The notes below the pieces were generated by a model. That model worked only from the letters and a program-made list of their open reading frames with translations. It was not told where the DNA came from and did no database searches. Below, piece after piece: positions 4,366-38,573 of a stretch of 64,000 nucleotides of DNA (position 1 is the stretch's first letter; every line of letters begins with the position of its first letter). Source of the DNA: Octopus bimaculoides (taxonomy: Eukaryota); contig NC_068991.1 of the NCBI RefSeq assembly GCF_001194135.2, positions 15,045,761-15,109,760 of the forward strand. Direction: 5' to 3'. The position numbers were made by a program, and so were the translations under genes.

Positions 4366-5395
4366 TTAACGGTGTCTTCCTATAGAAAGATTCCGGCAAA
4401 TAATGTCTCTCTTAATCTTGACGCTGTCGGGGAGTGGGGGCAAGTTGGTCACCGGTAGGGAATCATCCCCTTCGTCTTCGACTTCATATACCATGTACTC
4501 TTCACCAATGTCATCACAGCCAATACAGAAGTTATGTAGAACACACGCTAAGTGAATTATATCCACAATGGTGCTGAGATTCGTGGACTCAATGACCTTC
4601 AGTCTGCGGAACCGTCCATGGAGCAAGCCGAAGGCGCGCGTAATGACTTTCTGGACAGTCATCAGGCAACTGTTGTAATACTGTTGAGCGTCTGTCTTTG
4701 ACTCGGAGGTGTAAGGTGTGATCAACCAATCGAACAGAGGGAAGGCAGCATCACCAACCAAATGGTGCGAGTTGCACAAGTGTGCACCACGCTCCAGAAG
4801 GTGGCTATCAATGAGAGTTTGAAAGTCATGGAGACGACCAGCGTGTCCAGTTGAACAGAATATAAACCTCATATCCCGCTGGCAGGCAGCAATTAACTTC
4901 ACCGAGTAGTACCCGTTTTTATTGTAAAACTTCTCCCTATCATTGTCTAAAGCTTTCACCTGAATGTGTGTGGTGTCCAAAACACCAATGACATTCTTTA
5001 AATTACTCAGAGTCTCAAATTCTTGTGATATAATCTGCTTATCAGCGTCTTTCTCAGGCCATCGTATGAGATTCTCTTTTGACTTAGAAAGAAGAGCTTT
5101 CATTATTTTACTACGGCGATTAAGAAAAGACTCTTCAGTGATTGAAAAACGTTGACAGATTTCTGACAAAGTATCTTGGGAACCCATATACCATAGAACA
5201 GATAACAAACTTTTTTCCAAGGTCTCTGGTTGGCTCCCTCGTGCCATCTCAATTGCTTCAGGACACGTACGCAGGTAGCTGAACACTTTCCAAAACGTCA
5301 CAGACGACATCCGAAAGTTACTCTTGAAATCTGTCGACAACCATGAAGGTATATCCTCACTGTATTTTTTTAACTTCCGTCGATCGGCTTTGGAC
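4366..5395 (-). CDS. Harbinger/PIF transposase-derived protein (HARBI1-like, DDE_Tnp_4 fold), 342 codons plus stop after a phase-2 acceptor; probable terminal exon
   Basis: Uninterrupted ORF with family motifs FRMS, IGVLDTTHIQV, FYNKNGYYSVKLIAAC, GRLHD, LVGDAAFPLFDWLITPY, YN..L...KVITRAFGLLHGRFRRL and ACVLHNFC. Acceptor ttttttttcttctcaatatcag|GTCC at 5395; stop TAA at 4366-4368. Confidence 0.9.
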
Positions 5396-5568
5396 CTGAT
5401 ATTGAGAAGAAAAAAAAATTCGGATCGAAATACAGCAACAGGTGGAAGGAAAACTAAACTGAATGAAGAAGTACAGACAAATATCATTTAACATTTAAAA
5501 TAAAGAATGAGGCAGCTTGAATGGCAAACCAACAGCTCTCTACCAGATTAACTGCACTAGGATTAACA

Positions 5569-5636
<68 letters not shown>

Positions 5637-5833
5637 AGAGAAAGAGAAAGAAAGACAGCTAAAAAGGTAAAAAGATTCTTTTGATCGACACAAACATGTC
5701 ATAAAAGAACAAGGCAACTGACCATACGTATAGACAGAAACAAACTATCGCTAAGAACCTGTTGCTGAAATTTATCTAGGCCACACAGAAAGAGCTCTGT
5801 CTCTTAACTTTAAACTTCTATGATTGATATGGG

Positions 5834-6367
5834 NNNNNNNNNNNNNNNNNNNNNNNNNNNNNNNNNNNNNNNNNNNNNNNNNNNNNNNNNNNNNNNNNNN
5901 NNNNNNNNNNNNNNNNNNNNNNNNNNNNNNNNNNNNNNNNNNNNNNNNNNNNNNNNNNNNNNNNNNNNNNNNNNNNNNNNNNNNNNNNNNNNNNNNNNNN
6001 NNNNNNNNNNNNNNNNNNNNNNNNNNNNNNNNNNNNNNNNNNNNNNNNNNNNNNNNNNNNNNNNNNNNNNNNNNNNNNNNNNNNNNNNNNNNNNNNNNNN
6101 NNNNNNNNNNNNNNNNNNNNNNNNNNNNNNNNNNNNNNNNNNNNNNNNNNNNNNNNNNNNNNNNNNNNNNNNNNNNNNNNNNNNNNNNNNNNNNNNNNNN
6201 NNNNNNNNNNNNNNNNNNNNNNNNNNNNNNNNNNNNNNNNNNNNNNNNNNNNNNNNNNNNNNNNNNNNNNNNNNNNNNNNNNNNNNNNNNNNNNNNNNNN
6301 NNNNNNNNNNNNNNNNNNNNNNNNNNNNNNNNNNNNNNNNNNNNNNNNNNNNNNNNNNNNNNNNNNN
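5834..6367. other. Assembly gap directly upstream (minus sense) of the HARBI1-like exon; one of many N gaps, mostly at microsatellites
   Basis: Run of N. Confidence 0.99.
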
Positions 6368-6895
6368 TTTTTTTTTTTTTTTTTTTTTTGCTATCAAAAA
6401 TATTTTATCGCAATCAGAACAAAAATGAAACCATTCAAGCTAAAACCACACACACACACACACACACACGGCTAGAAGCTAAATCACGTTTCCAAGGCAG
6501 CAGCAATGATGCTCGTAAGTATTAAGTAGGCCATAAATACATTTACAAAGTTTAAATAATTGCACTACTTTCTACACAAAAGCCAATCAATATACTAACG
6601 CAGAAAACATTAGATTACACGGGGCTGATGAAGATGAAACTTAATTCGAGAGCAATGGGTATCTCTTAAAGGGAAATGAATGCACAATGGGTTAAAAATC
6701 TTAAAATTGAATTAAATGAAGTGAGAAGGGATGACTAACGAGTGTGTAGTAGTAGAATATGAAATAAAAACAATGAAAGACTATCTAAATAGTAATGAGA
6801 CGAAATGAGAGAATTTTGAATAGAGATTCAAAAAGAAAAAAAATAGAGGACGCGCTAAAAACAATTTATATTAAATAATTTTTTGACATTGAAAG

Positions 6896-7116
6896 CCTTT
6901 AGCATTCTGATTATTTTATCAAATATAATGCATATTTATTCGCATTGTTTTGAATTACTCATGCATTTATCTCAAAGGTTCAAGATTTTGATGGTGCGAC
7001 TGTTAACTTTTAGAAAGATATAGGATAAGTAGGAGAGGTTGACTCTGGCTGATTTGAATATAGAATCGGTAGAGTATTTGGGCTGGGTATGACCAGTTTA
7101 AATGTTAATGGGTTAA
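6896..7116 (+). mobile_element. Copy of the ~215-bp TTAA-flanked MITE
   Basis: cctttagcattctgatt...aaatgttaatgggttaa. Confidence 0.7.
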
Positions 7117-7334
7117 GGAGAATGATGGTTAGAACTAAGATAGATTACAAGGAACTGTTTAAAAAGAACAAAATTAGATTAATGCAGCCCAGCTAGAATA
7201 TTCCAGTTGAAAAACTTGGAAAACCTAACGTTACCAAAATAGTGAATCGATATCCAATGTAAGCACTTCACCTGCATGACTGACACAACCACAAGCTGGA
7301 TTCCCTTTCAACAATATCCTTATGTTGACTAATA

Positions 7335-7422
<88 letters not shown>

Positions 7423-7989
7423 ACGTGCGTATGTGGATGTGCGTGTGTGTGTTTATTGTTTTGTTTCAAATCACGGCCAAATATCCAAACATTATTTTCC
7501 CAGAAATAACTCCACTAAGTTACCAGAAAATAATGCTAAATAAAGTATGCTTTGAGGTAATGGCAAACCATATTCTCTCTTCCTTTATCAAAGGGACAGT
7601 TAATTCCTAAGGAAACAGTCGTGGCTCAGATGTCCATTCCCATGACTACATTTCATAGATCATGTCAAAATCTTTTGTAACAGTCAATGAATAATAAACA
7701 GAGTAACATATATATATATATACATATACATATATATATATATATATATAAAATTAAAAACAACAGCAATAAAATTACAAAAATTAATTCAACAAGCAAC
7801 CACATCCTAACTAATGCTCACAAAAGAATCATGCAAAATGATGGTAAAAGATTAATAGTCCATGTCAATTATTGGAACCTCCAACAGATTTTTAATTAGT
7901 GCCACATTTTAAACCATTTAATTAGTCCTTTATGTAGTTCAAATAGTCAAATAAAGAGATCCATTCAATCTTGAATATATATTAATATC

Positions 7990-8430
7990 ACCATTTTAAT
8001 TCTGTTTTCTCCATGCTTCCATGAGTAAGATGGTCCTTCTCTAGCACAACTTCTTAATACTTGTTGTAGTTCATCATCATCTCCTTCGTAAGGTCCACAA
8101 TTCTGAAATAAGCCTTCAGTTCTTTCCATGTCTTCCTTCAACTTTTTTCTTGAATCACTTAACACTTCTTTACGCAATTGCCATCTTCCATTGGCATTAC
8201 GCGTCTGCACCAGTGCAGTCTTCTCTCTTGCACACTACAACCAATTCCACTTAATCCTAATTTTTCTCTCAACTCATTTGTAAGCCACCATTCATGCACA
8301 CTTAACTAACATTACACATCCAAGGAAAAACATGTGTACTTCATTTCTTTTCAAGTCCAGCATATCCTCTACATTCAATGCCCAAGTTACATCGCTACAC
8401 ACTCTTTTGGAAGAATACAGAGCATGCAGA
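7990..8430 (-). mobile_element. RTE-like LINE C-terminal relic
   Basis: Similar to 3130-3600 (ALNVEDM vs ALNAEGM), with (CAT)n and ccatgc tail pieces. Confidence 0.5.
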
Positions 8431-9063
8431 AAATAGTTATGTATGTATGTATACATGTGTATGTGACAGAGATATATAGTGGTTACATATCCAAACTGAG
8501 GTTTCAATTTAATCAACATTTTGGTCAACTGCACACTGTGAACTGAGAAGAAAGATTTGCTGAAGGTGTAAATATGATCCCAGAGTTCTTGAACATCACC
8601 AGAACATCAGCTCAAGTTGTCACTGCTATATGGAGAAACACTACAGCATCTTTTCAGTATGTTTGGAAATAAAAGATCAAGAAGAGACTACCAGCATTAT
8701 ATGGGCAACAGTAAATGAAGCACCAGCATTTAGGAACAGATCTCATTTCAGTAACCTCTGTTTTATAGAGAAATCCCATATCAATCACCACCCTACTACA
8801 CCAATCCTCAACAGAACAAACAAATTTAATGACATTTGTCAGATATTTTTCAAAGAAAAAAAGACACTGACTGGTTATCTTAAACAAGTGACTTCAACAA
8901 TCACATAACATGAAGCGATAGCGATCACATTTTACAATGATTTCTTCTCAATTTGCCAATGTGTACAGTTGAGAAAAAGGGGCAACTGAACAAGACTGTG
9001 GTTCGGAAACATAAATCTGATTACCTTACATAAGAAAAAAATTATGCAAAACTCTAAGCTGTT

Positions 9064-9385
9064 CTACACAAAGTAATAATTACCACTTTTCAGTTTTATA
9101 TGAAAAAAAACAAAACAAAGTGTGTGTGAATATATAGAGAGAGGGACTAATGAAGACAAGAAAACAAGCATTGCATTATAAGGTAATGCCACATAATTAC
9201 AAAAAGAAACATTATCACTATGCCTGTGGTAACCAAACAATTTTGAACATTCAGAATTGATCGCTGACTGTAGACATTCTTCAAAATTCTTATGCAAAAA
9301 CTGTCTCTCCAAATAGTTGATTGAAGCAGCAAAATCTACAAACACCAATACAACAAAATCTAGAAAACCTAAATTTTTTTCATCC
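9064..9385 (-). CDS. Candidate terminal exon with a helical segment resembling the C-terminal half of a BEN domain (INYLERQFLHKNFEECLQSAINSECSKL)
   Basis: Frame is open from a phase-2 AG at 9385 (weak pyrimidine tract) or a phase-1 AG at 9335 to the stop at 9064, followed by about 500 nt of non-repeat UTR-like sequence. Domain resemblance is by eye only. Confidence 0.25.
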
Positions 9386-10355
9386 CTGCTTTTTAAAGAG
9401 AATCACCACAAGCTATTTCCCTTGTGCTGTTATTGGGCAGGGAGTTTCTTTTCATTTTCTTTTTTTTTTGTACATGCATGCAATTTTCTCTATATTTTTT
9501 TTCTTTCATATATACATGTAAATTCTTTCGGCAACTCCAAACTGCTCTCCATCAATTAATTATCCTAATTTTACATACCCACTTCAAAAAAACAGTTACA
9601 TTTTCAACCATGCATTTGTTAATTCCATGTCACCCAAGCAGCATCCACTAAGCTATTCAATTTTACTGCATGCTCAATGTATATGAAATGATATGTTCTA
9701 CTTTACATAATTGTCTAGAGATTGGCAACAAGAAACTTGAAATAACAATCTGTGAAGAATCTGCCAACCACATTTCACTAGCAAGGCATTGCTAGTGGCT
9801 GTGGTAGAAGACACTTGCCCAAGTAACCATGCAGTGAGTCACCACTGGGACCATGTGGTTTCAAAGCAAAGCTTGGTAATCACACATATACATTCACTTA
9901 TGTATATGTATACATGCACACACAATTTCTTTTCAAACGGGGGGGGGGACACTTCAGAGAGATTATAGTAACTTCTTAGAGCGGAGTTCATCATTTCACA
10001 TTGCTAGGTGACTACTACTCCCAGGTTCCGGCCTTCAGAAAAATACATTCAAAACATAACAAAAGAAAACAGAAGTGGAATATGTAAATTGTTAAGTGGA
10101 ACCTATGGAGAGTGAAATTAANNNNNNNNNNAGAGATTATAGTAACTTCTTAGTGCGGAGTTCATCATTTCACATTGCTAGGTGACTACTACTCCCAGGT
10201 TCCGGCCTTCAGAAAAATACATTCAAAACATAACAAAAGAAAACAGAAGTGGAATATGTAAATTGTTAAGTGGAACCTATGGAGAGTGAAATTAAATAGC
10301 ACAATGAGATCACTGCTAAATAATATCAACACTGAATGCAATTTTTCACGACTTT

Positions 10356-10386
<31 letters not shown>

Positions 10387-11227
10387 CAGCAGCAGCAGCA
10401 GCAGCAGCAGCTTGGCACACTTTCAACTCTGATAGACTAGATTTATGATCAAAGGCATTCCAGCCATGGCCAATCCCAAATACCCAAAAGGGTCCTTTTA
10501 TCCACAAGGAATTCTACAATATGAGGGATATATATAGCAATATCTTGTGGAAAGACAAGTAACAACCTAGAGGTTTCCACACTAACTTGCTGACATCCGA
10601 AACCAAAATAACAAATGATACTACTTTCTATTGCATAAATTCAGAGATGGATCAGATCCGAGATTATGGCATGCTGGAACTGAAAAACAAATTATATCAA
10701 CCTCAGCGCTAGTAGCCTAATATTTTATTCATCATCTTTCAAAAGGATAAAAAATAAAGTCAACCTCAGTTTATGTATATGTACATCAACTTTATATTGG
10801 AACTTTTTTCCCCCTGTATGTTTTCTAACTCTAACCTACTAGCTGGTACTTGTGTATTTTGATAAGCACATGGTGATCATTCTGTTTAAATAGATCAAAA
10901 ATAAATTGAAAAAAAAAAAAAATGGAAAAAAAAAAAAATGGAAAAAAAAAACAAAAGAAAAAATACAAGAAGAAAATGTACATAACTGCAATTATTTTCT
11001 TTAAATTGCAAACATGTAACTACCTACCCACAACTCTACTACTTCTACTACTACTACTACTACTACTACGACTACTAACACTACTACATTTTCGTTTATA
11101 GATGTCGCTAGCAGAGCACATTACTGAGAAACAGTGGACGAAACCAATGGCTAAAGTTTTAAAGGTAAAATCAAGAGACATCCATAGCAATTGGCTGAAC
11201 AAATACAACAAATAGCCAAACATATAT

Positions 11228-11265
<38 letters not shown>

Positions 11266-12084
11266 TGGAAAGAACAACAGTTGACAAAGAGACAGAGGAA
11301 AATGGTTCGAAATACTCTTTAGCACCACACAGCTAAAGACGGGTTAAGTTCTTTAAACCGCACATTTAAATCCCCCTTTTTTAAATTTTATTTTTTTATA
11401 TGACAAGAAGAAAATCTGGGCAGTATATAATAAACAACAGCATAGTGGAAAGAAGAAATACAGTATGCATGTGTGTGTGTGTATATATAAATATATACAT
11501 ACATATATATATAGATATACATATACATACACACATAAATGCACACACTACACTCATACTAAATTTGCATCAAGCAGCAATTCTACTAACATCTACTTGA
11601 AATTTAAAAAAAAACTTTTTTGTCAATAAAAAATTTTTTTGTTTTTTTTTTTCCATTTTGTTTTGTTTTGTTTGAATTTTTTTTTTTTTTTCAGTAACGA
11701 AAAGTAAAAGACAATAATAATTTATACAAACTTAGTGTCACTCGTAATTTACTCCTTTTTCAAGCTGCCCCATAGAATTAAATATATACAACACATGAAT
11801 GTAAAAAAAAAAAAAAAAAAAAANNNNNNNNNNNNNNNNNNNNNNNNNNNNNNNNNNNNNNNNNNNNNNNNNNNNNNNNNNNNNNNNNNNNNNNNNNNNN
11901 NNNNNNNNNNNNNNNNNNNNNNNNNNNNNNNNNNNNNNNNNNNNNNNNNNNNNNNNNNNNNNNNNNNNNNNNNNNNNNNNNNNNNNNNNNNNNNNNNNNN
12001 NNNNNNNNNNNNNNNNNNNNNNNNNNNNNNNNNNNNNNNNNNNNNNNNNNNNNNNNNNNNNNNNNNNNNNNNNNNNNNNNNNNN

Positions 12085-12121
<37 letters not shown>

Positions 12122-13101
12122 AGTTTATTCTTATTTTTCTTAAATATTTTTCTCTCCAAAAAATTTAAAAAACCTTATATGAAAAATAACTATATATAAA
12201 AATGTAATAAGAGCATAAAAAAATTGTGTATTTTAAAGGGTATATTTTTCATTAAAATTCCACAAATCACTAAAACAATTAAAAGAAATTCATTAAATGA
12301 TAAAATAAAAAAATTATTTAAAAATACTTTTTTTTGTTTATGTATTTATTTATTTATTTATTTATTTTAAAATACCAAAAATGAAGACTACTTAGAATAT
12401 ACAATGCTCTCAGTAAGAATTAAGTGCAGAGCGAGTACAGATACCGTTATCAAACACTCAAGGTTCCAGTAAGCAGATCTATTATTATTACCGTCATTGT
12501 GCATAATTATTGTTTCAGTTACACTCATAACAAATGCAGACCAGTTCCTCTTTCACATGAACAACAAAAGATACAAATACGACACGAAACGGAACAAAAA
12601 CAAAACAGCACTACAAGAAACAAAAACTGTGATAAAATACATTCGAATAACGTTGCTTAAGACTGGAATTAACAGAAGCTCTCAATATATCTATTGACTG
12701 TTTTTGCCAGCTTATTTCCATTGTAAGCAGAAAAATAATTATGTAATCTTTCGACAATTGAATGCATTTAATTAAGAGGCTGTCATTAATGATTTAAGTG
12801 GCTTTTACACACGAGTGGCATTGATAGGCTGACACTTTAATAAAAGAACACAGACCAGCATGGCTGTGTTGTTCAGCTTACTTTGCAATCATGTGGTTTC
12901 AGGTTCCATCCCACTGCATGACACCTAAAGGCAACTGTCCTCAACTATAGCCCTGAGCCAAGCTCTGCCCAGTGTTTCTTTAACTATGGCCTTGCGCTAA
13001 CCAATTCCTTGTAAGTGGAATTGGTAGATGTAACTGTAAAAAGTGTGTGTGTGTGTGCGCGCACACATATGTGTGTGCGTGTGTGTGCGCGCACACATAT
13101 G

Positions 13102-13169
<68 letters not shown>

Positions 13170-14559
13170 NNNNNNNNNNNNNNNNNNNNNNNNNNNNNNN
13201 NNNNNNNNNNNNNNNNNNNNNNNNNNNNNNNNNNNNNNNNNNNNNNNNNNNNNNNNNNNNNNNNNNNNNNNNNNNNNNNNNNNNNNNNNNNNNNNNNNNN
13301 NNNNNNNNNNNNNNNNNNNNNNNNNNNNNNNNNNNNNNNNNNNNNNNNNNNNNNNNNNNNNNNNNNNNNNNAAAAAAAAAAAAAAAACAGAAAAGAAAAG
13401 AAAACTATAAAAGTAAATTTAGCTGTTACTGAAAATGTTTGTTGATTATAAGAGCCATTCAGTCCATACCCGCCTGCAAAACGGACATTAAAAGGATGAT
13501 AATGATGATGATGATTAAGCAGTATTTAAAGACTTCTTGCTTTCTCCAAGCTATAATTTATTCATCATTATCTTTCCCCTGCCCCCACCATTTTTGAAGT
13601 CCATTTTTCCGGGTTTGCATGTCAGATGAAATCTGTTGAGGCTAAGTTTCTACAACTGGATGCCCTTCCTGTCACCAATCCTCACCTGTTTCCAAGTAAG
13701 ATTAATATTTCCCCCATGGCCAGTCATGCTTACATAGAAAACTGCACACAATCAACACTGCTTGTATGACAGTGAAGCTCAATTACAACTATCATGTGAC
13801 GTCAAGGCAATGGAACAAACACACATACATTTATGACTGGCTTCTTTTAGTTTACATCTACCAAATCCAATCACAGGGATTAGGTCAACCTACAGCTATA
13901 GTAGAAGAAACTTGCCCAATGTGACACAGTGAGACTGAACCCAAAACCATGCAATTGGGAAGCCAACTCCTTAACTACACAGCCATGCCTGCACCTATTT
14001 AAACACTCAGCCCTTTGAAACCATTAGTTAATTACACTGTGCTTCCATTGATGGATTTAAACACTGTCATGCTATCTACATGGCAACAGTCCAATGATTG
14101 ATGTTGGTAAAATTATAAAATGATTGACAAGTGTATTGAAACAGCATAAAAGAAGTGCTTTTGATCGGTGAAGGACACAAGTTGACAGGATCAACAGATT
14201 GATTCTTCTTCATGAGTCAATTGGGTGCAAGAAAACACAAGAGGCTAACAAGTCTTACTTTCTATCAGCAACACTTACAGATCATTTGAGAAAGTCGACC
14301 ACACAAATGTATTTTGTAAAAGTCAATAAACCGCCAAAGCAATGAAAGGGGGGGAAATATCAACAATAAAAAGACAAGGAAAATACAGGTAAAACATATC
14401 AAGAAAACAAAAAAAAAAATTGTGGGAGCATAAGAAGAGGAGAGATAGAGGGAGAATGTGCATGCATATACTAATCAGAATTATGCATTAAAAGTGTCTC
14501 ATAAGGAGTGACAAAAAAAAATGAATTATCAATAATTCAAATACAATTACACCTGGACA

Positions 14560-14595
<36 letters not shown>

Positions 14596-16098
14596 CATCT
14601 TTCATTCACCTCAACACATTATTTTCTCTGTCCATTTTTTTTTTTCCTCTTAATCCATTCTATCGAAGAGAGTAGATTCAAAACGTAAAAGACATTTCTA
14701 TTCTTCCCGAGCATTAAACTAATACACCTGCTTGTTGTTCCTACACCTGTCTTCGCCTTTTGCTTTCTGTAAATTTGAACTATACATACATATATGTGTG
14801 TGTGTGTGTGTGTGTGTGTATACACACACACACACACACAACCTTGATTTACAAATGCTTCTCATTATGAACAAGTGGTTTATGAACAATTTTTTAAACA
14901 TAAAACTTCTCGAGTGACATAAATGTTTCAAGTAACAAACACACAAGCTAGGAACAATGGTTGGCAACAAGCTAGAAGCATCAGCAAGATGGTCTCCACT
15001 GTATATTTATATTCAAAATGCTACTCAAATGAATAAACTGATTGCAATGTGTGTTCTCTCTAACCCAGAGGATAGGTAGGTACTGATGAAGCCCAAATTT
15101 CCTATAAATGAAGACCAAAACCTGCCCCTCTCCTCAACAAAAATAACATTACCCACAAGTGTCTGGTACTTTATCTGCCATAGTTATATCTCCTACATGT
15201 AGACTTGACAAACTGTAATGCAGTTTCACACAATAGATCATCAATCAGTCATGATTGTCTGATGATCCGTTTCATGAAACTCTAAATAACAGTTTGCAAA
15301 GTTTTTACAGCTTCAATAAAATACCATTTTACCCTACCTTTGGTATTAAAGGACTATATTTCCATCTTGTTTTGCACCTATGTGCTCACACCTATGTGTT
15401 TATGGGTGTGCATGAGTGTATGTGTGTGTTAAATATATATATATATATATATGTGTGTGTAGAGAGATATACACACAATTGTGTGCACATACTCCTGCAT
15501 ATTTATATGCACATTTAACTAACACAGTCTTACACAAAAACAGTGCAAGTTTGAAGAATTTTCAGTAAGAAATAAAAGTGCCACTACATGAAAATTATAT
15601 ATATATGGAAAAGAAAAGAAAAAAGCTATTCATATTTTCAAACAACATTGTGTTCAAAGAATCATTCCATGCTCTATTATTGTTATGGATTAAGTCTTAG
15701 AAGAAGCAAGGGGAAGAGAAAGAGAAGGGGTANNNNNNNNNNNNNNNNNNNNNNNNNNNNNNNNNNNNNNNNNNNNNNNNNNNNNNNNNNNNNNNNNNNN
15801 NNNNNNNNNNNNNNNNNNNNNNNNNNNNNNNNNNNNNNNNNNNNNNNNNNNNNNNNNNNNNNNNNNNNNNNNNNNNNNNNNNNNNNNNNNNNNNNNNNNN
15901 NNNNNNNNNNNNNNNNNNNNNNNNNNNNNNNNNNNNNNNNNNNNNNNNNNNNNNNNNNNNNNNNNNNNNNNNNNNNNNNNNNNNNNNNNNNNNNNNNNNN
16001 NNNNNNNNNNNNNNNNNNNNNNNNNNNNNNNNNNNNNNNNNNNNNNNNNNNNNNNNNNNNNNNNNNNNNNNNNNNNNNNNNNNNNNNNNNNNNNNNNN

Positions 16099-16142
<44 letters not shown>

Positions 16143-16145
16143 GTA

Positions 16146-16213
<68 letters not shown>

Positions 16214-16485
16214 AAGTAAATTATATTAAGATGAAATGAAAATACTAAAAAATTAAATGAAATGACAAAGCTATAAGGAGATCATTGTTTTGATAAATAT
16301 TACTTGAAACATGAGAATGTGAATGCAAAGAAAATATATAGATAACTAATGGTTGGTAGTGGAGAAGATGTATGTGAGAGAGGGGTGGGGAGAAATCAGT
16401 CTAAACTAAAAGCATATTTGTTTTCAAGAATGTATGTAGAATATCCTTCGAAGTCTTGTTAAACCCGATGTATATTTTTAAAAAA

Positions 16486-16597
16486 TCAGCCACTTAAGCT
16501 AAGAACATCATCATCATCTTCAATGTCATCTTCCTCATCATCATTGTCGTCATCTGTGCTATTGTCATCATGTATGCAAACATGCATATTTTCAATG
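16486..16597 (-). CDS. Candidate short acidic terminal exon (IENMHVCIHDDNSTDDDNDDEEDDIEDDDDVLSLSG*)
   Basis: Acceptor ttcttttaattaaactccaccag|C in phase 2, open to TGA. Could equally be a decayed (ATG)n retroposon tail. Confidence 0.22.
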
Positions 16598-17009
16598 CTG
16601 GTGGAGTTTAATTAAAAGAAACAAGCACTAAAAGAATACTTTCAAGTTTCTCAACGCTGAGTTTCCTATTTCATTTGTGAAACATGGTTACCAAATCTAA
16701 CATACTTCTTCCTCAACACACTGCTGCTGCTGCTGCTGTTGTTGTTAATCTTGCAAACCCTGAACAAGCAGACCTATAAATTGAGGGCCCTCTTGTTGTG
16801 ACCGCTAAGAATCATTTTCAGACATTATCTAATGCATTCCTTTGATAGCTTATTTTCTAAATATTGTGGAGTGTGGTTTGAAGATCTGCTTGCTATTTCT
16901 GGCAGGTCAAAAGATTGCACACACACACACACAGAGGTGCCATTAACCACTCGGTGGTTCTAGCAGGAAAGGAGTTGTCAGCATTGATTGGGTCCGAATC
17001 AACCCTTAA

Positions 17010-17229
17010 CCCTTTCGTTACTGTATTTATTTTGAGACGCTCTGTGTTTCTTTCAATTACTTTAAATATAACAAAGAATTTAGTAAAATAACTTAGTTAT
17101 CACTAAGCTAAGTTAGGAACATAAATTGTGACTAAGGTTTGGTGGAAGATTTTAATTCAAAATTTATGAAAGCAAGACATTTGTACTACAGAGCCAGAGG
17201 CGGTTTCAGCCGGGTTGGTAACGAAAGGG
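17010..17229. mobile_element. 220-bp piggyBac-type MITE
   Basis: 12-bp TIR CCCTTTCGTTAC / GTAACGAAAGGG flanked by TTAA on both sides (17006-17009, 17230-17233). Confidence 0.85.
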
Positions 17230-17298
17230 TTAATGAAGAATGAGTGCGATTAAAAGCAAAAAAACGTTCCCACCACAGAACATCCTGTTGTATTATTC

Positions 17299-17513
17299 TT
17301 GCCAGTACCCGCCTGACTGGCCCTCATGCCGGTGGCACGTAAAAGCACCCACTACACTCTCGGAGTGGTGTGGCGTTAGGAAGGGCATCCAGCTGTAGAA
17401 ACTCTGCCAAATCAGATTGGAGCCTGGTGTCGCCTCCTAGTCTACCAGTCCTCAGTCAAATCGTCCAACCCATGCTAGCATGGAAGGCGGACATTAAACG
17501 ATGATGATGATGA
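17299..17513 (+). mobile_element. Short copy of the RTE 3'-UTR repeat family
   Basis: Same consensus, (ATG)n tail. Confidence 0.85.
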
Positions 17514-18340
17514 GTAAGGTAGCGAGCATCCTGAATTCAAATGCTACTTAGGTAAACTTTGCCCTTTATCTTTTCGGTGTCAATAAAGCAAGTACTAGTC
17601 AAGTGCAGTGGTGGACGTAATCAACTTGCTCCCTGCCCACATCTATTGCTGGCCTTGTGTCAAAATTAGAATTAAAATAATTCAAGAATTGGCAGCTATT
17701 TCTGGTAAATTGAGAAAGCAGCAACCCTCACATTTGCTTTTGCCCATAGGTAGTCAGTCTTCTGTCATTAAACTCCATTTCTAGTATGCCTCTGACCAGC
17801 AATTCAACACTTGCTCATCCACACAGTATCAGCATCAATTCTATTATTCAGTATCAGCATCAATTCACATTATTTTCTCTACCATCCCCATCACCTACCA
17901 AATGCCTAGCTGTGTTAAGTTCTTTGTTATTACCATCACTCTTTCTCTCTCTCTCACACATACACACACACACAAAGAGAGGAACATAACACATAATGCT
18001 GAATGCAGTTGAATCATTCATCTCCAATCACATCTACTTTTCATTTTAATTTCTTTCAATCATAGGCTTGCAGTCATGTTGCGGTGCCACCCTGTAATGT
18101 TTAGTCAAACAAATCTAGACCCCAGTAACAATTTTTTTAAACTGGTACATATTCCATTGAACTCTTCTGAACAGTTAAATTACTGGGTCACAAACAAACC
18201 AACACCAGCTGTCAGGTGCTAGGGAAGAACAAACACGAAACAAAGACACTCACATACATATATATATTATTGGCTAAACTGGCAACATGACCATCCCCAA
18301 ATACAACAATATATATATATATTAAAACATAAGGTAAAAA

Positions 18341-18566
18341 CATTATTTACATTTGACGGATATTTGTCCTCATCTTGTTTGTTGTTAACACAACGTTTCG
18401 GCTGATATACCCTCCAGCCTTCGTCAGGTGTCTTGGGGAAATTTCGAACCTGGGTATATCAGCCGAAACGTTGTGTTAACAACAAACAAGATGAGGACAA
18501 ATATCCGTCAAATGTAAATAATGTAAATAACGTTAATAATTCCTCATCTCTTAAATATAGAACTGT
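18341..18566 (-). mobile_element. Penelope-like element remnant with a 72-bp inverted arm and 12-bp target-site duplication
   Basis: Perfect inverted repeat 18341-18412 / 18452-18523. ATAAGGTAAAAA at 18329-18340 and 18567-18578. Contains the CTGACGA...CGAAACGTT motif typical of PLE pseudo-LTRs. Confidence 0.75.
18387..18432 (-). ncRNA. Minimal type-I hammerhead ribozyme motif
   Basis: Minus strand reads GACAC-CUGACGA-A-GGCUG(10 nt)CAGCC-GAAAC-GUU-GUGUU: helix I 5 bp, helix II 5 bp, core intact, palindromic AACGUU helix III. Confidence 0.65.
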
Positions 18567-18983
18567 ATAAGGTAAAAAATCAGATATTAATTAATATCGA
18601 TTTATTACCAGGAAGCTAGCACCTTGAAAGAATCAAAGGGATTCAGAAAAAATATCTGAGATCTCAGGGGATTAATGTAGATGTGTATATATAACGACGA
18701 CCACTAAGTGGACAGTTAATGAGCTAGAAGAAGATCACATGTAATGTGTCTACTAAGACCTAATAGTTCTCAAATGAAATTCAGCGAAATACCAAACCGT
18801 ATGCGGGCATATATATATATATCTTACTAAAATTGACTTGAAACCATGGTACAGAATATAGATCGGTAATTGTTTTTATTTTTCATTCCCTTTCGAAATT
18901 ATCCCTACTTTTTGTGGTATGTAGTCTTGCTGCTATTTCTAGCGGGTTTCGATGTCCTATTACAGGCATCTCTGTATTTTAAA

Positions 18984-19023
<40 letters not shown>

Positions 19024-19617
19024 CACACACACACACACACAACAGGTTTCCATACAGTTTTGATTAGCCAAATTCCCTCAGAAGTACTGATTGGCCACAG
19101 TTTATGGTAGAAGAGACCCACAAAATACCATACAGTGGGACTGAGCCTGATAGCACATGGTTATAGAGCAGGCTCCTTGACCACAGTCATGCCTGAGCAG
19201 TTTCATTTCACCATGTTAGACTAGTCACAATTGCTGAGTTTACATGTTGTCAGTCGCCTATATATTATACTGTTATGAGTTGAACCATGCTATCAACTAG
19301 GATCAGCTGATAACAAGGTTCAGTCACACTCATTTATCAGTCAACAAAGCTGATAAAAGGAGAACGAGTCTGCAGACTAATTAGTCTGCAGACTAATTTG
19401 CAAAATGACAGCTAATTTGTTGCCTTCGTTATTTATATACATAACTTTGACTATTTTAGCAATTGTTTATTTTTTTGTTGTTGTTGTTGATTTTTGGTTT
19501 CCTTTTGAGGAATAATGATTCAATGACAACATTATCCAAAATGTGGTTTTATTTGTATGTAAATATATGTGTGTGTACGTAAATGTGTATTTATTTGTGT
19601 GTATGTAAATATATATT

Positions 19618-19900
19618 TGTGTCAGTGCCGCTGGACTGGCTCTTGTGCGGGTGGCACATAAATACACCATTTCGAGCATGGCCGTTGCCAGTAGCGCCTG
19701 ACTGGCCTTCGTGCCGGTGGCACGTAAAAGCACCCACTACACTCTCGGAGTGGTTGGCATTAGGAAGGGCATCTAGCTGTAGAAACTCTGCCAAATCAGA
19801 TTGGAGCCTAGTGTAGCCATCTGGTTTCACCAGTCCTCAGTCAAATCGTCCAACCCATGCTAGCATGGAAGGCGGACGTTAAACAATGATGATGATGATG
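19618..19900 (+). mobile_element. Short copy of the RTE 3'-UTR repeat family
   Basis: Same consensus with two internal subrepeats, (ATG)n tail. Confidence 0.85.
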
Positions 19901-22227
19901 TAGATATGTATTTATTTATGGTTGATGTTAGGAAGGGCACCCAGCCATAAAATCCCTGCCAAAACAGACACAGTAGCCTAAGGTAGTTTTTCTACCTGAC
20001 CGGCTCTTGGTCAACCATCCTACCCATACATGGAAGAAGGACCATTAAGCAATGATGATGATGACGATATATAGGCAAATCAAAAATAAAACTAAAAACA
20101 ACAAAATTCAAAAGGATGCACAGAGTAAAATGTATTAGGTTGACGCTCAGTTTAAGAATGGAAACAAGAGCGGGGTGTAAAGTTTTGAGCATGGCTCTTC
20201 ATCAGAAAGAGGAGGAGGAGGAGAAAGATCCAGAGAGCACATGTCTGATTACATGGCTGAAGCGACCAGAAATGGAGAAACACACACACACACACNNNNN
20301 NNNNNACATAACACATACGCACACATCATTGTCTTGTTTTAATGTCCACTTTTCCATGCTTGTATGGGTTAAAGAGTTTATTGAGGTTTATTTTCTCTGA
20401 CCAGATACCCTTCAGGTCACCAAAAAGCAAGGCAATATTTGCACCATGGTCAGACATTCTCACAGAATACTGGAAATGAATGACAGTTTGTAGGATAGCT
20501 GTAAAAGTGTGTGGCTATTATCAGTTTGTATGACAGCCACATGCTTTTACAACTATCACATAAGGTCAAGAGAAGCAGATGCTCACTAACACACACATAC
20601 ACAAATATATATAACTGGCTTCTGTTTCCTTCTACCAAATTCACTTACAAGGCATTGGTCAGTCCAGGTCTACAATACAAGACACTTGCCCTGGGTGTCA
20701 CACAGCCTTCAATAAATTTTGAAGAATTTGGTGGGAATCAGTAAAATGACATTTTTGTTAGTAGTTTGACATTTAGAATCTTGCAGATCTGAACAAAAAA
20801 GCTTAGACACTTAAAATAAGATATAGGGTGGAATAGGGTATCACAGAAGCAGTCTTGGACAGATTTGGTACTGACAGGGTGAAAACCATGGCAAACTATC
20901 CCTGAGATAAGAAGTTAGTCAATCAGACTATCAGATAAAATAAGTTAATGCAATAGGACAACATGGTGGATTGATTTACAAAAAAATAGCGACCAAATCT
21001 CCTTCAAATTACATACTTTAAAAATAATAATGCAGCTTTAAGGCTATTTAATTGAGAAAGCATTTTGCAGCTCTATGATTTTGGGTTCAATCTCACTGCA
21101 ATGCACCTTAAGCTCCCCCTAGGGCTTAGCAAGCTTGTTGTGCATGTGCCTGTGTGTATATATGCACATATGTACATGTGCATATGTGCACGTATACATT
21201 TGATTCTGCGTGTGCTCACGTTAACAGCACCTGAGCAGCACTGATGTCGTTTCTATTCCTGATAAACAAATCTGGCAGCTTGTCAGTTGAACGTGCATAA
21301 GCAGGGAATACAACAGCTTACTTGAAAACAGGTGTGGGTTGGCCAAAAAAAGGGACTTCTGGCCACAGAATATTTCCTCAAGAAAGTTCCATCGAACCCA
21401 TACCAAAATGGGGGGGGGGGTCAGCATAAAAACGATGATGATAACGATGCTGAGGAAGTTTGCCAGGTTAAGAAACATTAAAGTATATAACTAACCATAA
21501 TTCAATATTCAACAAACTCCAATAACAAATTAATTTTCAATACAAAGAACTTTTTCAAACAATTCATCTGCTTATTTACAAGATACAACAGACTTTTTTT
21601 TTTTTTTTTTGAAGAATCTTAATTTCATTATTAATTAAATCACATCAATTTACATTTTCAACTTACAATATTATTCTCCTCGTTTGAAAAACAAAAATAT
21701 CAAATTATAAATAATATGAATAATAAATGAATTAAAATAAAATGCATTAAACATGGAAAAGATTCCGTAATATATTCATTAACCAAATTATTCTAACGTC
21801 ATCAGCCTTAATGTTTCGTTTATCCCAGATTTCCATAGGTTACAGAAGAATCAATTATTAAAATACTTGAATTTACATTATTATACAAATGAAGAAGTTC
21901 TCAATGAAAACTCTCGAATGAGACATTCATGCGAACAAGATAAACAAACAAAAAAACGAATAGACACAACAACAACAACAACAATTGTTAAGTAGATGAT
22001 ATATATAAAACATGGTAGCCAGCCCATTGTGTAAACACACATGAAGAAAACAATGTAAGGCAAGAATAAATAAATATACTGAAAATCCAATAGTCAATAA
22101 AAGAATCAATTCCAACGTAACTCTAACTGAAACAAGCAACTTAATGTACTGCACAAAAACATTAGGCTGCAATCAAATCACTAGGAATTTCAGCTTTAGA
22201 GAACTTAAATATGTAGTGGATTATAAT

Positions 22228-22457
22228 TTAACCCTTCAGTATTCAGGTTATTCTATCAAATGTAATGCTTATTTATTTGCGTTGCTTTTGATTGATCACA
22301 CGTTATCCTGTGGCTTCAAGATTTCAATGATGTGACTGTTTATTTTTAGAATGACATTGAAGGATATAAGCATGAGAGGCCAGATCTGGTTTGGTTTGAA
22401 CATAAAACAAGTAGAATATTTCAGGGCCTGATATGGGGTGGTTTAAATAATAAAGGG
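22228..22457 (+). mobile_element. Copy of the ~215-bp TTAA-flanked MITE
   Basis: ttaacccttcagtattcagg...tttaaataataaaggg. Confidence 0.7.
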
Positions 22458-22739
22458 TACTTGAATGCGAAATATACATCATGTTAAACCAACAAGGGAA
22501 TCTCTACGTAGGTGATTTAGCTGCTACTACCAGCATCAAATTTGCAGTTGTTAAGAATGCTGGTTAAACATCCTGTGCCTGTTGGTTCAATTCTTTATAT
22601 TCTGAGTTCAAATCCTACTGAGATTAACCTTGCCTTTCATCTTTCCAGGGTCAATAATTACGTATCAATCCATGGCAATGGATTGACAAAACTGTTAGGG
22701 AGTCAGGCAAGATAGTTTGCAATATCTGTTCAAGATCTT

Positions 22740-23150
22740 TGTATACCGGCAGTAATGATTGTAACAATACTGGTGCTAAGCTGTATCACCCCAAAACAGC
22801 AGCATTTCCCTTGGATAAACATAGGTAGCATAGAGAGAGGGGAGACTTGCATTCATGTCGAACTGCCTTTTTTCCTCAAAACAATCTTGCCCAGATCTGA
22901 GCATATATGTATAGATGTATGGTCAACCTTGTCAAATGAAAACCAAGGCCCCTGAGAGTACCATCTGTGGTCTCTTATCAAACATGACCACTTTGTGCCA
23001 GTCTTTGCTGCCATGGCTGTCTCCCTAGCAGCTTTGATCAGCTGTTTGGGTTCCAAGCCAATCTTTTGCAGTAAACAATGTATTCATCTTGCTGGCTTCA
23101 ATGAGAATGAGATTGCATTCCTTTCTTTGGTCAAGTTGTGATATTTCTAG
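22740..23150 (-). mobile_element. Highly decayed CR1/L2-type reverse transcriptase relic
   Basis: FSFDKVDH resembles DFAKAFDKVDH; multiple stops and frameshifts. Confidence 0.4.
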
Positions 23151-24185: not shown

Positions 24186-24400
24186 AAGGTAGCAAGCTTG
24201 CAAAATTGTTAGCACATTGGACAAAATGCTTAACAACATTTGTTCTGACTCGTCAGATTACGAGTTTGAATTTCACCGAGGTCAACTTCACTTCATTCCA
24301 CCAGGGCCAACAAAATAAGGTACCAGTTAAGTACTTAGAGTCGAAGTAACTGACTTGCTCCTCCTCTCAAAATTGCTGGCGTTGTGCCAAAACTTGAAAC
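24186..24400 (+). mobile_element. Third SINE-like family (~210 bp)
   Basis: aaggtagcaagcttgc...gagtttgaatttcaccgaggtcaact...aaaattgctggc. Related copies at about 17515-17680, 22560-22680 and 10660-10760. Confidence 0.65.
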
Positions 24401-25407: not shown

Positions 25408-25454
<47 letters not shown>

Positions 25455-26027: not shown

Positions 26028-26062
<35 letters not shown>

Positions 26063-26072
26063 NNNNNNNNNN

Positions 26073-26117
<45 letters not shown>

Positions 26118-38334: not shown

Positions 38335-38519
38335 CTAGGGTGTGTGGAAAATTGTCCAGCAGGAACACCAGATGGTGGGTAATAAACAGAGTTAGTCTTG
38401 ACAAGGGCGTTCGCATTAAGACTGCTACTAGGTCCATTTGACAAGGTCTTAGACACTTGGGGACCATTACTACTAGATCCACTACTTGATTGAAGATTAT
38501 TTAAAGAAGAAATTTGCTG

Positions 38520-38573
<54 letters not shown>

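What the first reader, a model, noticed from the sequence alone, without database searches (positions are those of the whole stretch)
4639..4977. Transposase keeps its three acidic Asp positions but has Thr at the catalytic Glu: candidate domesticated pseudo-nuclease
Seen: Asp in VLDTTH (4975-4977), LHD (4825-4827) and VGD (4750-4752) is retained, but the family motif IE(R/K)AFG reads ITRAFG (ACG at 4639-4641). GAG to ACG needs two substitutions. The ORF has no stop or frameshift over 1 kb, while every other element-derived coding relic here (mariner, RTE, RLE, CR1-like) is broken. Established: plant ALP1 is a Harbinger derivative reported to have lost catalytic residues and to act through protein interactions. 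Inference: the fold is under selection but catalysis is not.
Basis: partly seen in the sequence, partly recalled or inferred. Interest (0 to 1): 0.72.

Follow-up and report, generated by a model that had tools for sequence, protein, structure and literature searches.

The report
Dead Harbinger transposase fused to TRIM33-like gene
An octopus gene ends in a transposon-derived nuclease domain that has lost a key catalytic residue yet has been kept almost unchanged in octopus and cuttlefish, where it is spliced onto a TRIM33-like chromatin-regulator gene; this is a new example of a jumping gene recruited as a host protein module.

Summary
Window 4366-5487 (-) holds a full-length DDE_Tnp_4 (PIF/Harbinger transposase) domain. 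The three family-conserved Asp are kept. The catalytic Glu is Thr (ACG, 4639-4641), and the flanking signature R(3)E(6)K reads Q..T..H.

The Thr is not a private mutation. Five further lineages (a second Octopus sample and four cuttlefish-type sequences, two placed in Acanthosepion) carry the identical peptide VQKVITRAFGLLHGRF, with three different Thr codons. dN/dS is 0.03-0.09 in every unsaturated pair, and there are no indels in 999 nt.

No terminal inverted repeats flank the ORF and the window holds no second copy. The window is Octopus bimaculoides, where RefSeq calls the product 'putative nuclease HARBI1'.

The 'ORF' is really the last exon (5395-4366) of a spliced gene. A cuttlefish mRNA contig joins it in frame to a penultimate exon (window 27469-27250, across a 21.9-kb intron). 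Further upstream the contig reaches the 3' tail of a TRIM33/TIF1-like exon with B-boxes, coiled coil and polyQ (39763-38335). All three map on the same strand, in order, with canonical splice sites.

Best reading: a host-transposase fusion older than the octopus-cuttlefish split, in which a dead Harbinger domain takes the place of the usual PHD-bromodomain. The biochemical role is inferred, not shown. It is a new member of a known kind.

The parts
4366..5395 (-). Terminal coding exon (342 codons plus stop). It holds the N-terminal helical/HTH region and the complete DDE_Tnp_4 domain of a PIF/Harbinger transposase.
   Evidence: Pfam match. 100% identical to RefSeq XP_014777370.1 from SKADRRKL onward. 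The cuttlefish mRNA L010 joins the genomic sequence exactly here. dN/dS 0.03-0.09 and no indels across six lineages. AF2 pLDDT 93.
4639..4641 (-). Thr283 codon (ACG) at the catalytic Glu position.
   Evidence: The column is Glu in 113/149 homologues. Thr in all six cephalopod lineages, encoded as ACG, ACA or ACC.
4651..4653 (-). Gln279 codon at the conserved Arg of the R(3)E motif.
   Evidence: The column is Arg in 128/149. The signature D..K..D..D..P..R(3)E is described in PMC4122938.
4618..4620 (-). His290 codon at the conserved Lys of E(6)K.
   Evidence: The column is Lys in 131/149. Only the window and its cuttlefish relative P0002 combine Q, T and H.
4975..4977 (-). Asp171, the first catalytic Asp (VLDTTH), retained.
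4825..4827 (-). Asp221 (GRLHD), a family-conserved Asp, retained.
4750..4752 (-). Asp246 (VGDAAF, the D-x-x-Y/F motif), probably the second catalytic Asp, retained.
   Evidence: Its assignment as the second triad residue rests on my knowledge of the IS5-type D(1)G(Y/F) motif.
5396..5464 (-). 3' end of the intron: conserved block, T-run and AG acceptor.
   Evidence: About 80% identical between octopus and cuttlefish although synonymous sites are saturated. A 7-nt length difference in the T-run shows it is non-coding.
5396..27249 (-). Intron of 21,854 nt, with N gaps and repeat relics.
   Evidence: GT at 27249-27248 and AG at 5397-5396. The junction is confirmed by the RefSeq protein and by L010.
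27250..27469 (-). Penultimate coding exon (GWTAALSRIKTPEN...RPASSDW). The RefSeq Met is at 27380.
   Evidence: tblastn of the RefSeq N-terminus gives 100%, and of the cuttlefish mRNA 77%. Canonical acceptor and donor. The 30 codons upstream of the RefSeq Met show pS 0.77 against pN 0.19.
38335..39763 (-). Internal exon of a TRIM33/TIF1-like protein: end of RING, B-box 1, B-box 2, coiled coil, polyQ and a tail ending in VKTNSVYYPPSGVPAGQFS.
   Evidence: Pfam zf-B_box E = 2.7e-15. 36-43% identity to TRIM33-like proteins. Canonical acceptor and donor. The tail matches aa 51-86 of the cuttlefish mRNA that continues into the transposase exon.

Best explanation
The finding is the last exon of a cephalopod host gene. 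It was captured from a PIF/Harbinger transposon before octopuses and cuttlefish diverged.

The exon keeps the transposase's helical N-terminal region and its RNase-H-like DDE_Tnp_4 fold under strong purifying selection. The R(3)E(6)K part of the active site has been rewritten to Q(3)T(6)H. It is therefore most likely not a DDE nuclease any more (inferred).

The exon is spliced in frame to upstream host exons. In cuttlefish mRNA, and by colinearity in the octopus genome, these belong to a TRIM33/TIF1-like gene (B-box 1, B-box 2, coiled coil, Q-rich linker). The dead transposase domain thus sits where this family normally carries its PHD-bromodomain chromatin reader.

Proposed working (inferred, not shown): the domain is a non-catalytic binding module. 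It would bind DNA, or a Myb/MADF-type partner as in HARBI1-NAIF1 and ALP1-ALP2, and so target the oligomerising RBCC part of the protein.
For: Domain and active site:
- Full-length DDE_Tnp_4 match.
- Glu, Arg and Lys columns replaced and the three Asp kept, judged against 148 homologues.
- The family signature D..K..D..D..P..R(3)E is given in PMC4122938.

Fixation and selection:
- The identical 16-residue ex-catalytic helix occurs in six lineages, while 11 of its 16 codons differ synonymously between octopus and cuttlefish. Thr is ACG, ACA or ACC.
- dN/dS is 0.05 (octopus pair) and 0.03-0.09 (cuttlefish pairs). For octopus against cuttlefish, pN is 0.15 and pS 0.8. Fisher p ranges from 1e-7 to 1e-90. 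There are no indels in 999 nt.

Not a transposon copy:
- No TIRs apart from microsatellite matches.
- No second copy in the window.
- Octopus-cuttlefish homology stops at the stop codon and at the intron's 3' end.

Gene structure:
- RefSeq XP_014777370.1 (O. bimaculoides) is identical to the exon and carries an upstream exon found at 27380-27249.
- L020 shows the window is GCA_001194135.2, chromosome CM046611.1.

Fusion:
- L010 (Logan SRR25158145) is 99.8% identical to A. esculentum genomic contigs from the acceptor onward and absent from them upstream of it, so it is spliced.
- Its ORF is open from base 1 (587 codons plus stop). It maps in order on the window's minus strand to 38450-38346, 27470-27249 and 5394-4369.
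- All exon borders in the window are canonical.
- The codons upstream of the RefSeq Met evolve like coding sequence.

Fold: AF2 pLDDT 93, pTM 0.92.
Against: - No octopus transcript was available. The RefSeq model starts inside the penultimate exon, so a stand-alone isoform may exist or even dominate.
- The cuttlefish contig reaches only the polyQ tail of the TRIM-like exon, not the B-boxes.
- Residues 87-170 of that mRNA could not be located in the window. Three N gaps lie in the interval.
- No RING, PHD or bromodomain exon was found in the window or in 5.6 kb beyond it. The full architecture, and whether a PHD-bromo isoform exists, are therefore unknown.
- One genomic contig (L011) has a 1-nt shorter A-run at the exon start. 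This is either a long-read error or a real frameshift.
- No Myb/MADF partner gene was seen nearby (by eye only).
- All three Asp are strictly conserved, so residual metal binding or activity is not excluded.
- PDB fold matches to DDE transposases are not significant (best E = 0.026).
- The last protein search found no database protein carrying both B-box and DDE_Tnp_4.
Confidence: 0.7

Rival explanations
1. It is a stand-alone domesticated HARBI1-like gene, as in the RefSeq model (386 aa starting at Met 27380). On this view it is not part of the TRIM33-like gene, and the cuttlefish contig is a read-through (conjoined) transcript or an assembly chimera.
For: RefSeq XP_014777370.1 starts in the penultimate exon. 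Only one spliced contig, from one run, supports the link. The middle part of that mRNA was not found in the octopus window. No database protein with both domain types was found.
Against: The contig's ORF is open in one frame across every junction for 587 codons. Its three mapped pieces lie in the same order and on the same strand in another order of cephalopods. The TRIM-like exon ends in a consensus donor, AG|GTAAGT, and so must splice onward. The 30 codons upstream of the RefSeq Met show pS 0.77 against pN 0.19. The penultimate exon has a proper acceptor.
Confidence: 0.2
2. It is still an active nuclease or recombinase with a non-canonical site, for example three Asp (D171, D221, D246) acting as a DDD-type triad with Thr in a supporting role.
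For: All three Asp are invariant in six lineages, and the surrounding motifs are the most conserved parts of the protein. DDD triads exist in other transposase superfamilies (my own knowledge).
Against: Glu is replaced, and so are its conserved partners Arg and Lys. According to the ALP1 paper, mutating a single triad residue of the Ping transposase drastically reduces transposition (PMC4671723). D221 is conserved in the active family members too, where Glu is still required. No transposon ends are present.
Confidence: 0.08
3. It is a transposon copy, either a neutral relic or part of an active family, that merely happens to be intact.
For: It has a transposase domain, lies in a repeat-rich region and sits next to LINE relics. 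About 24% of homologue clusters also lack the Glu, so dead copies are common.
Against: dN/dS is 0.03-0.09 and there are no indels. There are no TIRs and only one sequence per lineage in the searches. The splice site and upstream exon are conserved. Sequence similarity between octopus and cuttlefish is confined to the coding part.
Confidence: 0.02

Closest known systems
ALP1 (and ALP2) of Arabidopsis, domesticated PIF/Harbinger transposases associated with PRC2
   Same: Both are Harbinger transposase-derived host proteins conserved over long times. Both have non-conservative substitutions in the DDE triad (ALP1 reads DGA for DDE; PMC4671723). [quoted passage not shown] ALP1 acts through protein interactions.
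   Different: ALP1 lost the second Asp and the Glu, whereas here both Asp are kept and Arg, Glu and Lys are replaced. ALP1 is a stand-alone protein, whereas this one is spliced to upstream host exons. The lineages differ (plants versus cephalopods), so the origins are surely independent. No interaction data exist here.
HARBI1 of vertebrates (with its partner NAIF1)
   Same: Both are Harbinger transposase-derived single-copy host genes of about 350 aa with the same domain layout. RefSeq gives the octopus protein this name.
   Different: HARBI1 is reported to keep the DDE triad and is predicted to be a nuclease (my own knowledge; it is mentioned in PMC4671723). The cephalopod protein has Q..T..H. 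Identity to any non-cephalopod homologue is at most about 38%. Orthology was not tested by phylogeny.
Insect domesticated PIF genes (DPLG, APLG, LPLG, BPLG)
   Same: The same criteria are met: purifying selection (their dN/dS is 0.04-0.33), no TIRs or TSDs, single copy, and a conserved two-exon structure in some (PMC9710019).
   Different: Those are stand-alone genes, often co-domesticated with an adjacent MADF gene. No MADF gene was seen here, and the exon is fused to a TRIM-like gene.
Host-transposase fusion genes (SETMAR, PGBD3-CSB, KRABINER and the 94 tetrapod cases)
   Same: The transposase sits in its own exon and is joined by splicing to host exons. [quoted passage not shown] The fusion is then kept by selection (bioRxiv 10.1101/2020.05.07.082677).
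   Different: Those cases are in tetrapods, mostly capture DNA-binding domains and are mostly fused to KRAB. Here nearly the whole Harbinger transposase is captured, the host part is a TIF1-type B-box/coiled-coil protein, and the clade is Cephalopoda.
TRIM33/TIF1 family (TRIM24, 28, 33, 66)
   Same: The upstream exon aligns at 36-43% identity over B-box 1, B-box 2 and the coiled coil with TRIM33-like proteins of chiton, scallop, spiders, hemichordates and vertebrates.
   Different: Family members end in a PHD finger and bromodomain. No such exons occur in the window. The cuttlefish mRNA continues into the transposase domain instead.

Membership tests
PIF/Harbinger transposase (Pfam DDE_Tnp_4, PF13359) | Sequence match to the family profile above the curated cut-off | tested here: met
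   94 bits against a cut-off of 24.8, covering profile positions 1-158 of 158.
PIF/Harbinger transposase (Pfam DDE_Tnp_4, PF13359) | Intact catalytic signature D..D..D..R(3)E (DDE triad) | tested here: not met
   The three Asp are present. Arg is Gln279, Glu is Thr283 and the following Lys is His290.
PIF/Harbinger transposase (Pfam DDE_Tnp_4, PF13359) | Terminal inverted repeats and a 3-bp target-site duplication around the element | tested here: not met
   The only inverted repeats in 2500-9500 are microsatellite matches. Homology to the cuttlefish sequence ends at the stop codon.
PIF/Harbinger transposase (Pfam DDE_Tnp_4, PF13359) | Second gene for a Myb/SANT/MADF DNA-binding protein within the element | tested here: inconclusive
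   No such ORF was seen by eye in six-frame translations of 1-4365 and in ORFs of 5488-14000. No profile search of these stretches was run.
Domesticated PIF/Harbinger gene (criteria of PMC9710019) | Purifying selection on the coding sequence | tested here: met
   dN/dS is 0.03-0.09 in all unsaturated pairs. Octopus against cuttlefish gives pN 0.15 and pS 0.8. No indels.
Domesticated PIF/Harbinger gene (criteria of PMC9710019) | Orthologues in distantly related species at a conserved locus | tested here: met
   Found in O. bimaculoides, a second Octopus sample, A. esculentum, A. pharaonis and two further lineages. Locus conservation is shown only through the shared upstream exons. Flanking-gene synteny could not be tested.
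Domesticated PIF/Harbinger gene (criteria of PMC9710019) | Single copy, with no related copies in the genome | tested here: inconclusive
   No second copy in the 64-kb window and one sequence per lineage in the protein collection. Whole genomes could not be searched.
Domesticated PIF/Harbinger gene (criteria of PMC9710019) | Expression | tested here: met
   A spliced mRNA contig, L010, comes from run SRR25158145. No octopus transcript was seen.
Host-transposase fusion gene (Cosby et al.) | Transposase domain in an exon separate from the host-domain exons, joined in frame in a transcript | tested here: met
   L010 is one open frame through the tail of the TRIM-like exon, a linker, the penultimate exon and the DDE exon. 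The B-boxes themselves are not on the contig. In octopus they lie in the same exon as the matched tail.
Host-transposase fusion gene (Cosby et al.) | Parental (non-fusion) transcript present or lost | not testable with these tools
   No transcriptome search was available. No PHD or bromodomain exon occurs in the window or in 5.6 kb downstream.
TIF1/TRIM33 family | B-box 1, B-box 2 and coiled coil | tested here: met
   Pfam zf-B_box (two stretches) and zf-B_box_Trim66. Aligns with residues 55-473 of a chiton TRIM33-like protein.
TIF1/TRIM33 family | N-terminal RING finger | tested here: inconclusive
   Only the last Cys pair (CPTC) is in the exon. No C3HC4 pattern occurs in 39764-64000. It may lie outside the window.
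TIF1/TRIM33 family | C-terminal PHD finger and bromodomain | tested here: not met
   tblastn with six TRIM33-like proteins finds only the B-box/coiled-coil exon in the window and nothing in L020. The cuttlefish mRNA ends in DDE_Tnp_4.

The most novel reading that the evidence does not exclude
In coleoid cephalopods, a Harbinger transposase exon replaced the PHD-bromodomain chromatin reader of a TIF1/TRIM33-type co-regulator at the very same splice junction.

The penultimate exon ends ...SSDW. In 142 of 147 family members (E/D)D(W/Y) directly precedes the first Cys of the PHD finger.

On this reading the dead transposase now targets the RBCC scaffold to DNA, either directly or through a Myb/MADF partner. 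A histone-mark reader would thus have become a sequence-directed regulator, kept for a time I estimate (own knowledge) at more than about 250 million years.
Probability: 0.25. Interest if true: 0.75.

Novelty: new member of a known kind. Interest (0 to 1): 0.55.

Why it matters
Domesticated transposases and host-transposase fusions are a recognised route to new regulators. Nearly all worked examples come from vertebrates, insects and plants.

This would be an old example in cephalopods, conserved between octopus and cuttlefish. It has an unusual pairing: a TIF1-type B-box/coiled-coil protein carrying a nearly complete but catalytically disabled Harbinger transposase instead of its histone-reading module.

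It offers a clean natural experiment on what a transposase fold is kept for once catalysis is gone, because the ex-active-site helix is the most conserved part. It also flags a RefSeq model ('putative nuclease HARBI1') that is probably both misnamed in function and truncated at its 5' end.

Tried and rejected
- PDB sequence search with the ORF found nothing relevant.
- Foldseek of the AF2 model against the PDB gave DDE transposases (ISCth4, Mos1, Metnase, Tn5, Sleeping Beauty) at the top, but none was significant, so I do not use it as proof of fold.
- An exact look-up of the 373-aa ORF found nothing, because the ATG-initiated ORF is not a real product.
- The TRIM-like exon was used to identify the organism. 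No close relative appeared, probably because polyQ words swamped the candidate list.
- The organism was instead identified through the 90% cluster members and through L020, which is identical to the window.
- A conceptual octopus fusion protein used as query returned only TRIM33-family proteins. It did not even return the known cuttlefish and octopus DDE proteins, so that negative result says little.
- tblastn for the Q/P-rich middle of the cuttlefish mRNA in the window found only polyQ noise.
- Pattern and tblastn searches for RING, PHD and bromodomain exons were negative.
- I considered a sequencing error or private mutation for the Thr. This is rejected because three synonymous Thr codons occur across lineages.
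- I considered a neutral relic. This is rejected by dN/dS and the absence of indels.
Full report
**1. The observation**

On the minus strand the window has an open frame from 5487 to 4366 (373 codons). Pfam DDE_Tnp_4, the transposase domain of PIF/Harbinger elements, matches residues 170-319 over its whole length (E = 9.5e-27, 94 bits, cut-off 24.8).

- Asp171, GAC, 4977-4975
- Asp221, GAC, 4827-4825
- Asp246, GAT, 4752-4750
- Thr283, ACG, 4641-4639

I aligned the exon with 148 homologues from an exhaustive HMMER search, one representative per 50%-identity cluster, and counted the columns:
- The Thr column is Glu in 113 of 149 sequences.
- The column four residues before it is Arg in 128. The window has Gln279.
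- The column seven residues after it is Lys in 131. The window has His290.
- The three Asp columns are Asp in 133, 132 and 140.

[quoted passage not shown] The window fits its residues in order as D171, K197, D221, D246, P258, then Q279 and T283 in place of R and E. The D171-K197, D221-D246, D246-P258, P258-Q279 and Q279-T283 spacings fit the printed values; K197-D221 is 23 residues against the printed 29.

The source does not let me tell which of D221 and D246 is counted in the triad. From my knowledge of the IS5-type D-x-G-Y/F motif I take D246. Both are retained, so the conclusion does not depend on this choice.

About a quarter of the homologue clusters (36 of 149) also lack the Glu. A missing Glu is therefore not remarkable by itself in this family.

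**2. Whether the Thr is fixed and the sequence is under selection**

The first protein search found two close clusters, and their members were then listed. Cluster 1 contains XP_014777370.1, 'putative nuclease HARBI1 [Octopus bimaculoides]'. It is 100% identical to the window from SKADRRKL to the end. The locus fetched for it, L020, is base-for-base the reverse complement of window 1-37380. The window is therefore O. bimaculoides GCA_001194135.2, chromosome CM046611.1.

A second Octopus-like sample (Logan SRR11869391 and SRR11869384) is 99% identical in protein.

Cluster 2 (75-77% identical) holds:
- Contigs from runs that include ERR12945500, which a cuttlefish genome paper identifies as Acanthosepion esculentum reads.
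- CAE1312692.1 of Acanthosepion pharaonis.
- A group of five Logan runs.
- A more divergent ENA contig.

All six lineages have exactly VQKVITRAFGLLHGRF. Between octopus and cuttlefish 11 of these 16 codons differ, all synonymously. Thr is ACG in Octopus, ACA in Acanthosepion and ACC in the ENA lineage.

Nei-Gojobori estimates:
- dN/dS is 0.05 for the two Octopus sequences (24 synonymous and 5 non-synonymous differences).
- dN/dS is 0.03-0.09 among the four cuttlefish-type lineages.
- Octopus against cuttlefish gives pN 0.15 with pS about 0.8 (saturated).
- Fisher p ranges from 1e-7 to 1e-90.
- There is not one indel in 999 nt in any of the six.

**3. Whether it is a transposon copy**

- Inverted repeats around the ORF are only microsatellite matches.
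- tblastn finds no second copy in the window.
- Similarity between octopus and cuttlefish DNA runs from about 70 nt upstream of the exon to the stop codon and not beyond.

**4. Gene structure**

The first 31 codons of the 'ORF' are intron. There is a T-run followed by AG. The octopus and cuttlefish sequences differ there by 7 nt in length. The cuttlefish sequence has no ATG in that stretch. Downstream of the AG the differences are synonymous.

The RefSeq protein has 44 further N-terminal residues. tblastn places them at 27380-27249 (100%). By the GT-AG rule the donor is GATTG|gtaagt, so that exon ends at 27250. The acceptor is atcag|G, so the last exon starts at 5395. The intron is 21,854 nt.

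About 65 nt of the intron's 3' end are roughly 80% conserved between octopus and cuttlefish, although synonymous sites are saturated. This suggests selection on the splicing of this exon.

**5. The fusion**

One member of cluster 2 (P0281, 409 aa) comes from a 1797-nt Logan contig of run SRR25158145 (L010). From nt 734 on it is 99.8% identical to A. esculentum genomic contigs. Its first 733 nt are absent from them. It is therefore a spliced mRNA.

Its reading frame is open from the first base (587 codons plus stop). The ATG chosen by the gene caller is internal. Mapped on the window, three pieces lie in order on the minus strand:
- aa 51-86 at 38450-38346 (69% identity, E = 7e-10)
- aa 171-245 at 27470-27249 (77%)
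- aa 246-587 at 5394-4369 (76%)

The first piece is the 3' tail of the large exon 39763-38335. That exon encodes two B-boxes (Pfam E = 2.7e-15), a coiled coil and a long polyQ. It aligns at 36-43% identity with TRIM33/TIF1-like proteins from chiton to vertebrates. It has a canonical acceptor (ttttcag|AC) and a consensus donor (CCTAG|gtaagt) 11 nt after the matched tail. It is therefore an internal exon that must splice onward.

The penultimate exon has its own acceptor (ccaaag|GTTGG). The 30 codons between that acceptor and the RefSeq Met show pS 0.77 against pN 0.19 versus cuttlefish. They therefore evolve as coding sequence, which means the octopus reading frame continues upstream of the annotated start.

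Taken together, the DDE exon is the terminal exon of a TRIM33/TIF1-like gene in cuttlefish, and very probably in octopus.

What is missing:
- Residues 87-170 of the mRNA (Q/P-rich) were not found in the window. Three N gaps lie in the interval.
- The contig does not reach the B-boxes.
- No octopus transcript was available.
- No database protein with both domain types was retrieved. That last search also failed to return the known close relatives, so it is uninformative.

**6. What the transposase domain replaced**

TRIM33-like proteins of other molluscs and of deuterostomes end in a PHD finger and bromodomain. tblastn with six of them finds only the B-box/coiled-coil exon in the window, and nothing in the 5.6 kb beyond its left end.

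In 142 of 147 retrieved family members the three residues before the first Cys of the PHD finger are (E/D)D(W/Y). The cephalopod penultimate exon ends ...RPASSDW at its donor. This was noticed after the fact and is a short motif. It does suggest that the donor which once joined the PHD exon now joins the transposase exon.

Homologous transposases have a median of 34 more residues N-terminal to the point where the cephalopod exon begins, and their C-termini coincide with its end. [quoted passage not shown]

**7. How it probably works**

Shown:
- The fold-encoding sequence, including the N-terminal helical region and the former active-site helix, is under strong purifying selection.
- AlphaFold2 with the 149-sequence alignment gives a confident model (pLDDT 93, pTM 0.92). 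It has helices at the N-terminus, a beta-sheet core and a long helix carrying Thr.

Inferred:
- With Arg, Glu and Lys of the catalytic helix replaced, DDE-type catalysis is most likely lost. The ALP1 paper notes that mutating one triad residue of the rice Ping transposase drastically lowers transposition (PMC4671723).
- The domain then serves as a binding module, either for DNA or for a Myb/MADF-type partner. Harbinger transposases need such a partner, and HARBI1-NAIF1 and ALP1-ALP2 retain one.
- Attached to an oligomerising RBCC scaffold, it would stand in for a histone reader.

I could not inspect the model's coordinates. The PDB fold matches are DDE transposases but are not significant. No partner gene was seen next to the exon.

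The strict retention of all three Asp leaves open some metal binding or a non-canonical activity.

**8. Comparison with what is known**

It meets the published criteria for a domesticated PIF/Harbinger gene (PMC9710019). It resembles ALP1 in having a disabled triad, although different residues are affected (DGA in ALP1). It differs from vertebrate HARBI1, whose name it carries in RefSeq, in lacking the Glu. Orthology to HARBI1 was not tested.

In being spliced to host exons it belongs with host-transposase fusions such as SETMAR, PGBD3-CSB and KRABINER. It differs from them in the clade, the host partner (TIF1-type) and the captured part (nearly the whole Harbinger transposase).

Full-text searches found no paper describing a TRIM33-Harbinger fusion or a cephalopod Harbinger domestication. 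The library is incomplete, so this is absence in the library only.

**9. Verdict**

The more interesting point lies outside its coordinates: the exon is the C-terminal module of a larger, conserved, probably chimeric gene.

It is a new member of a known kind. Confidence:
- About 0.9 that it is a domesticated domain with a disabled triad.
- About 0.7 for the TRIM33-like fusion.
- About 0.3 for the proposed role.

Noticed in passing
window 38335-39763 (-): Large internal exon of a TRIM33/TIF1-like protein (B-box 1, B-box 2, coiled coil, a polyQ run of about 45 Q) with canonical splice sites. It turned out to belong to the same transcript as the finding.
   Followed up: yes
window 27381-27469 (-): The 30 codons upstream of the RefSeq start codon of XP_014777370.1 are conserved as protein with cuttlefish (pS 0.77, pN 0.19). 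The RefSeq model is probably truncated at its 5' end.
   Followed up: partly
window about 3300-4201 (-) and about 7968-8606 (-): LINE (RTE-like) reverse-transcriptase relics with many in-frame stops, one directly downstream of the stop codon of the DDE exon and one inside the 21.9-kb intron. They gave no Pfam hit as short ORFs and were recognised by motif (FGFVPGRGTTDAIF).
   Followed up: partly
window 37616-37984 (-): Intact 122-aa ORF (…IIEVSCPADINI…IGALGFVSKCL…) that looks like the C-terminal module of a retroelement protein. It has no Pfam match. It lies in the intron just 3' of the TRIM-like exon.
   Followed up: no
L011:9880-9960 (ENA ERZ21867824 ctg120922l): The A-run in GTTAAAAAAATACAG at the start of the DDE exon is one base shorter than in all other lineages, shifting the frame relative to the upstream exon. 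The remaining 332 codons are intact. This is either a long-read homopolymer error or a lineage in which the fusion frame is broken.
   Followed up: partly
window 5396-5464 (-), L003:700-772: An intronic block (AGTyTTCCTTCCACCTG…GTATTTCGATC) just upstream of the polypyrimidine tract is conserved between octopus and cuttlefish although neutral sites are saturated. It may be a branch-point or splicing-regulatory element.
   Followed up: partly
window 27250-27260 (-): The penultimate exon ends …SSDW. In 142/147 TRIM33/TIF1-like proteins (E/D)D(W/Y) immediately precedes the PHD finger's first Cys. This hints that the transposase exon took over the old PHD splice junction.
   Followed up: partly
window, 14 N runs (e.g. 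5834-6367, 30639-31253, 31978-32560, 33597-33906): Assembly gaps, mostly flanked by (TG)n, (TA)n or (CT)n microsatellites. Three of them lie where the missing middle exon(s) of the gene would be expected.
   Followed up: no
alignment A2 (homologues P0005-P0150): 36 of 149 cluster representatives of this transposase family lack the catalytic Glu, carrying Q, D, K, T, N and other residues instead. Many may be decayed copies, but some could be further domestications.
   Followed up: no
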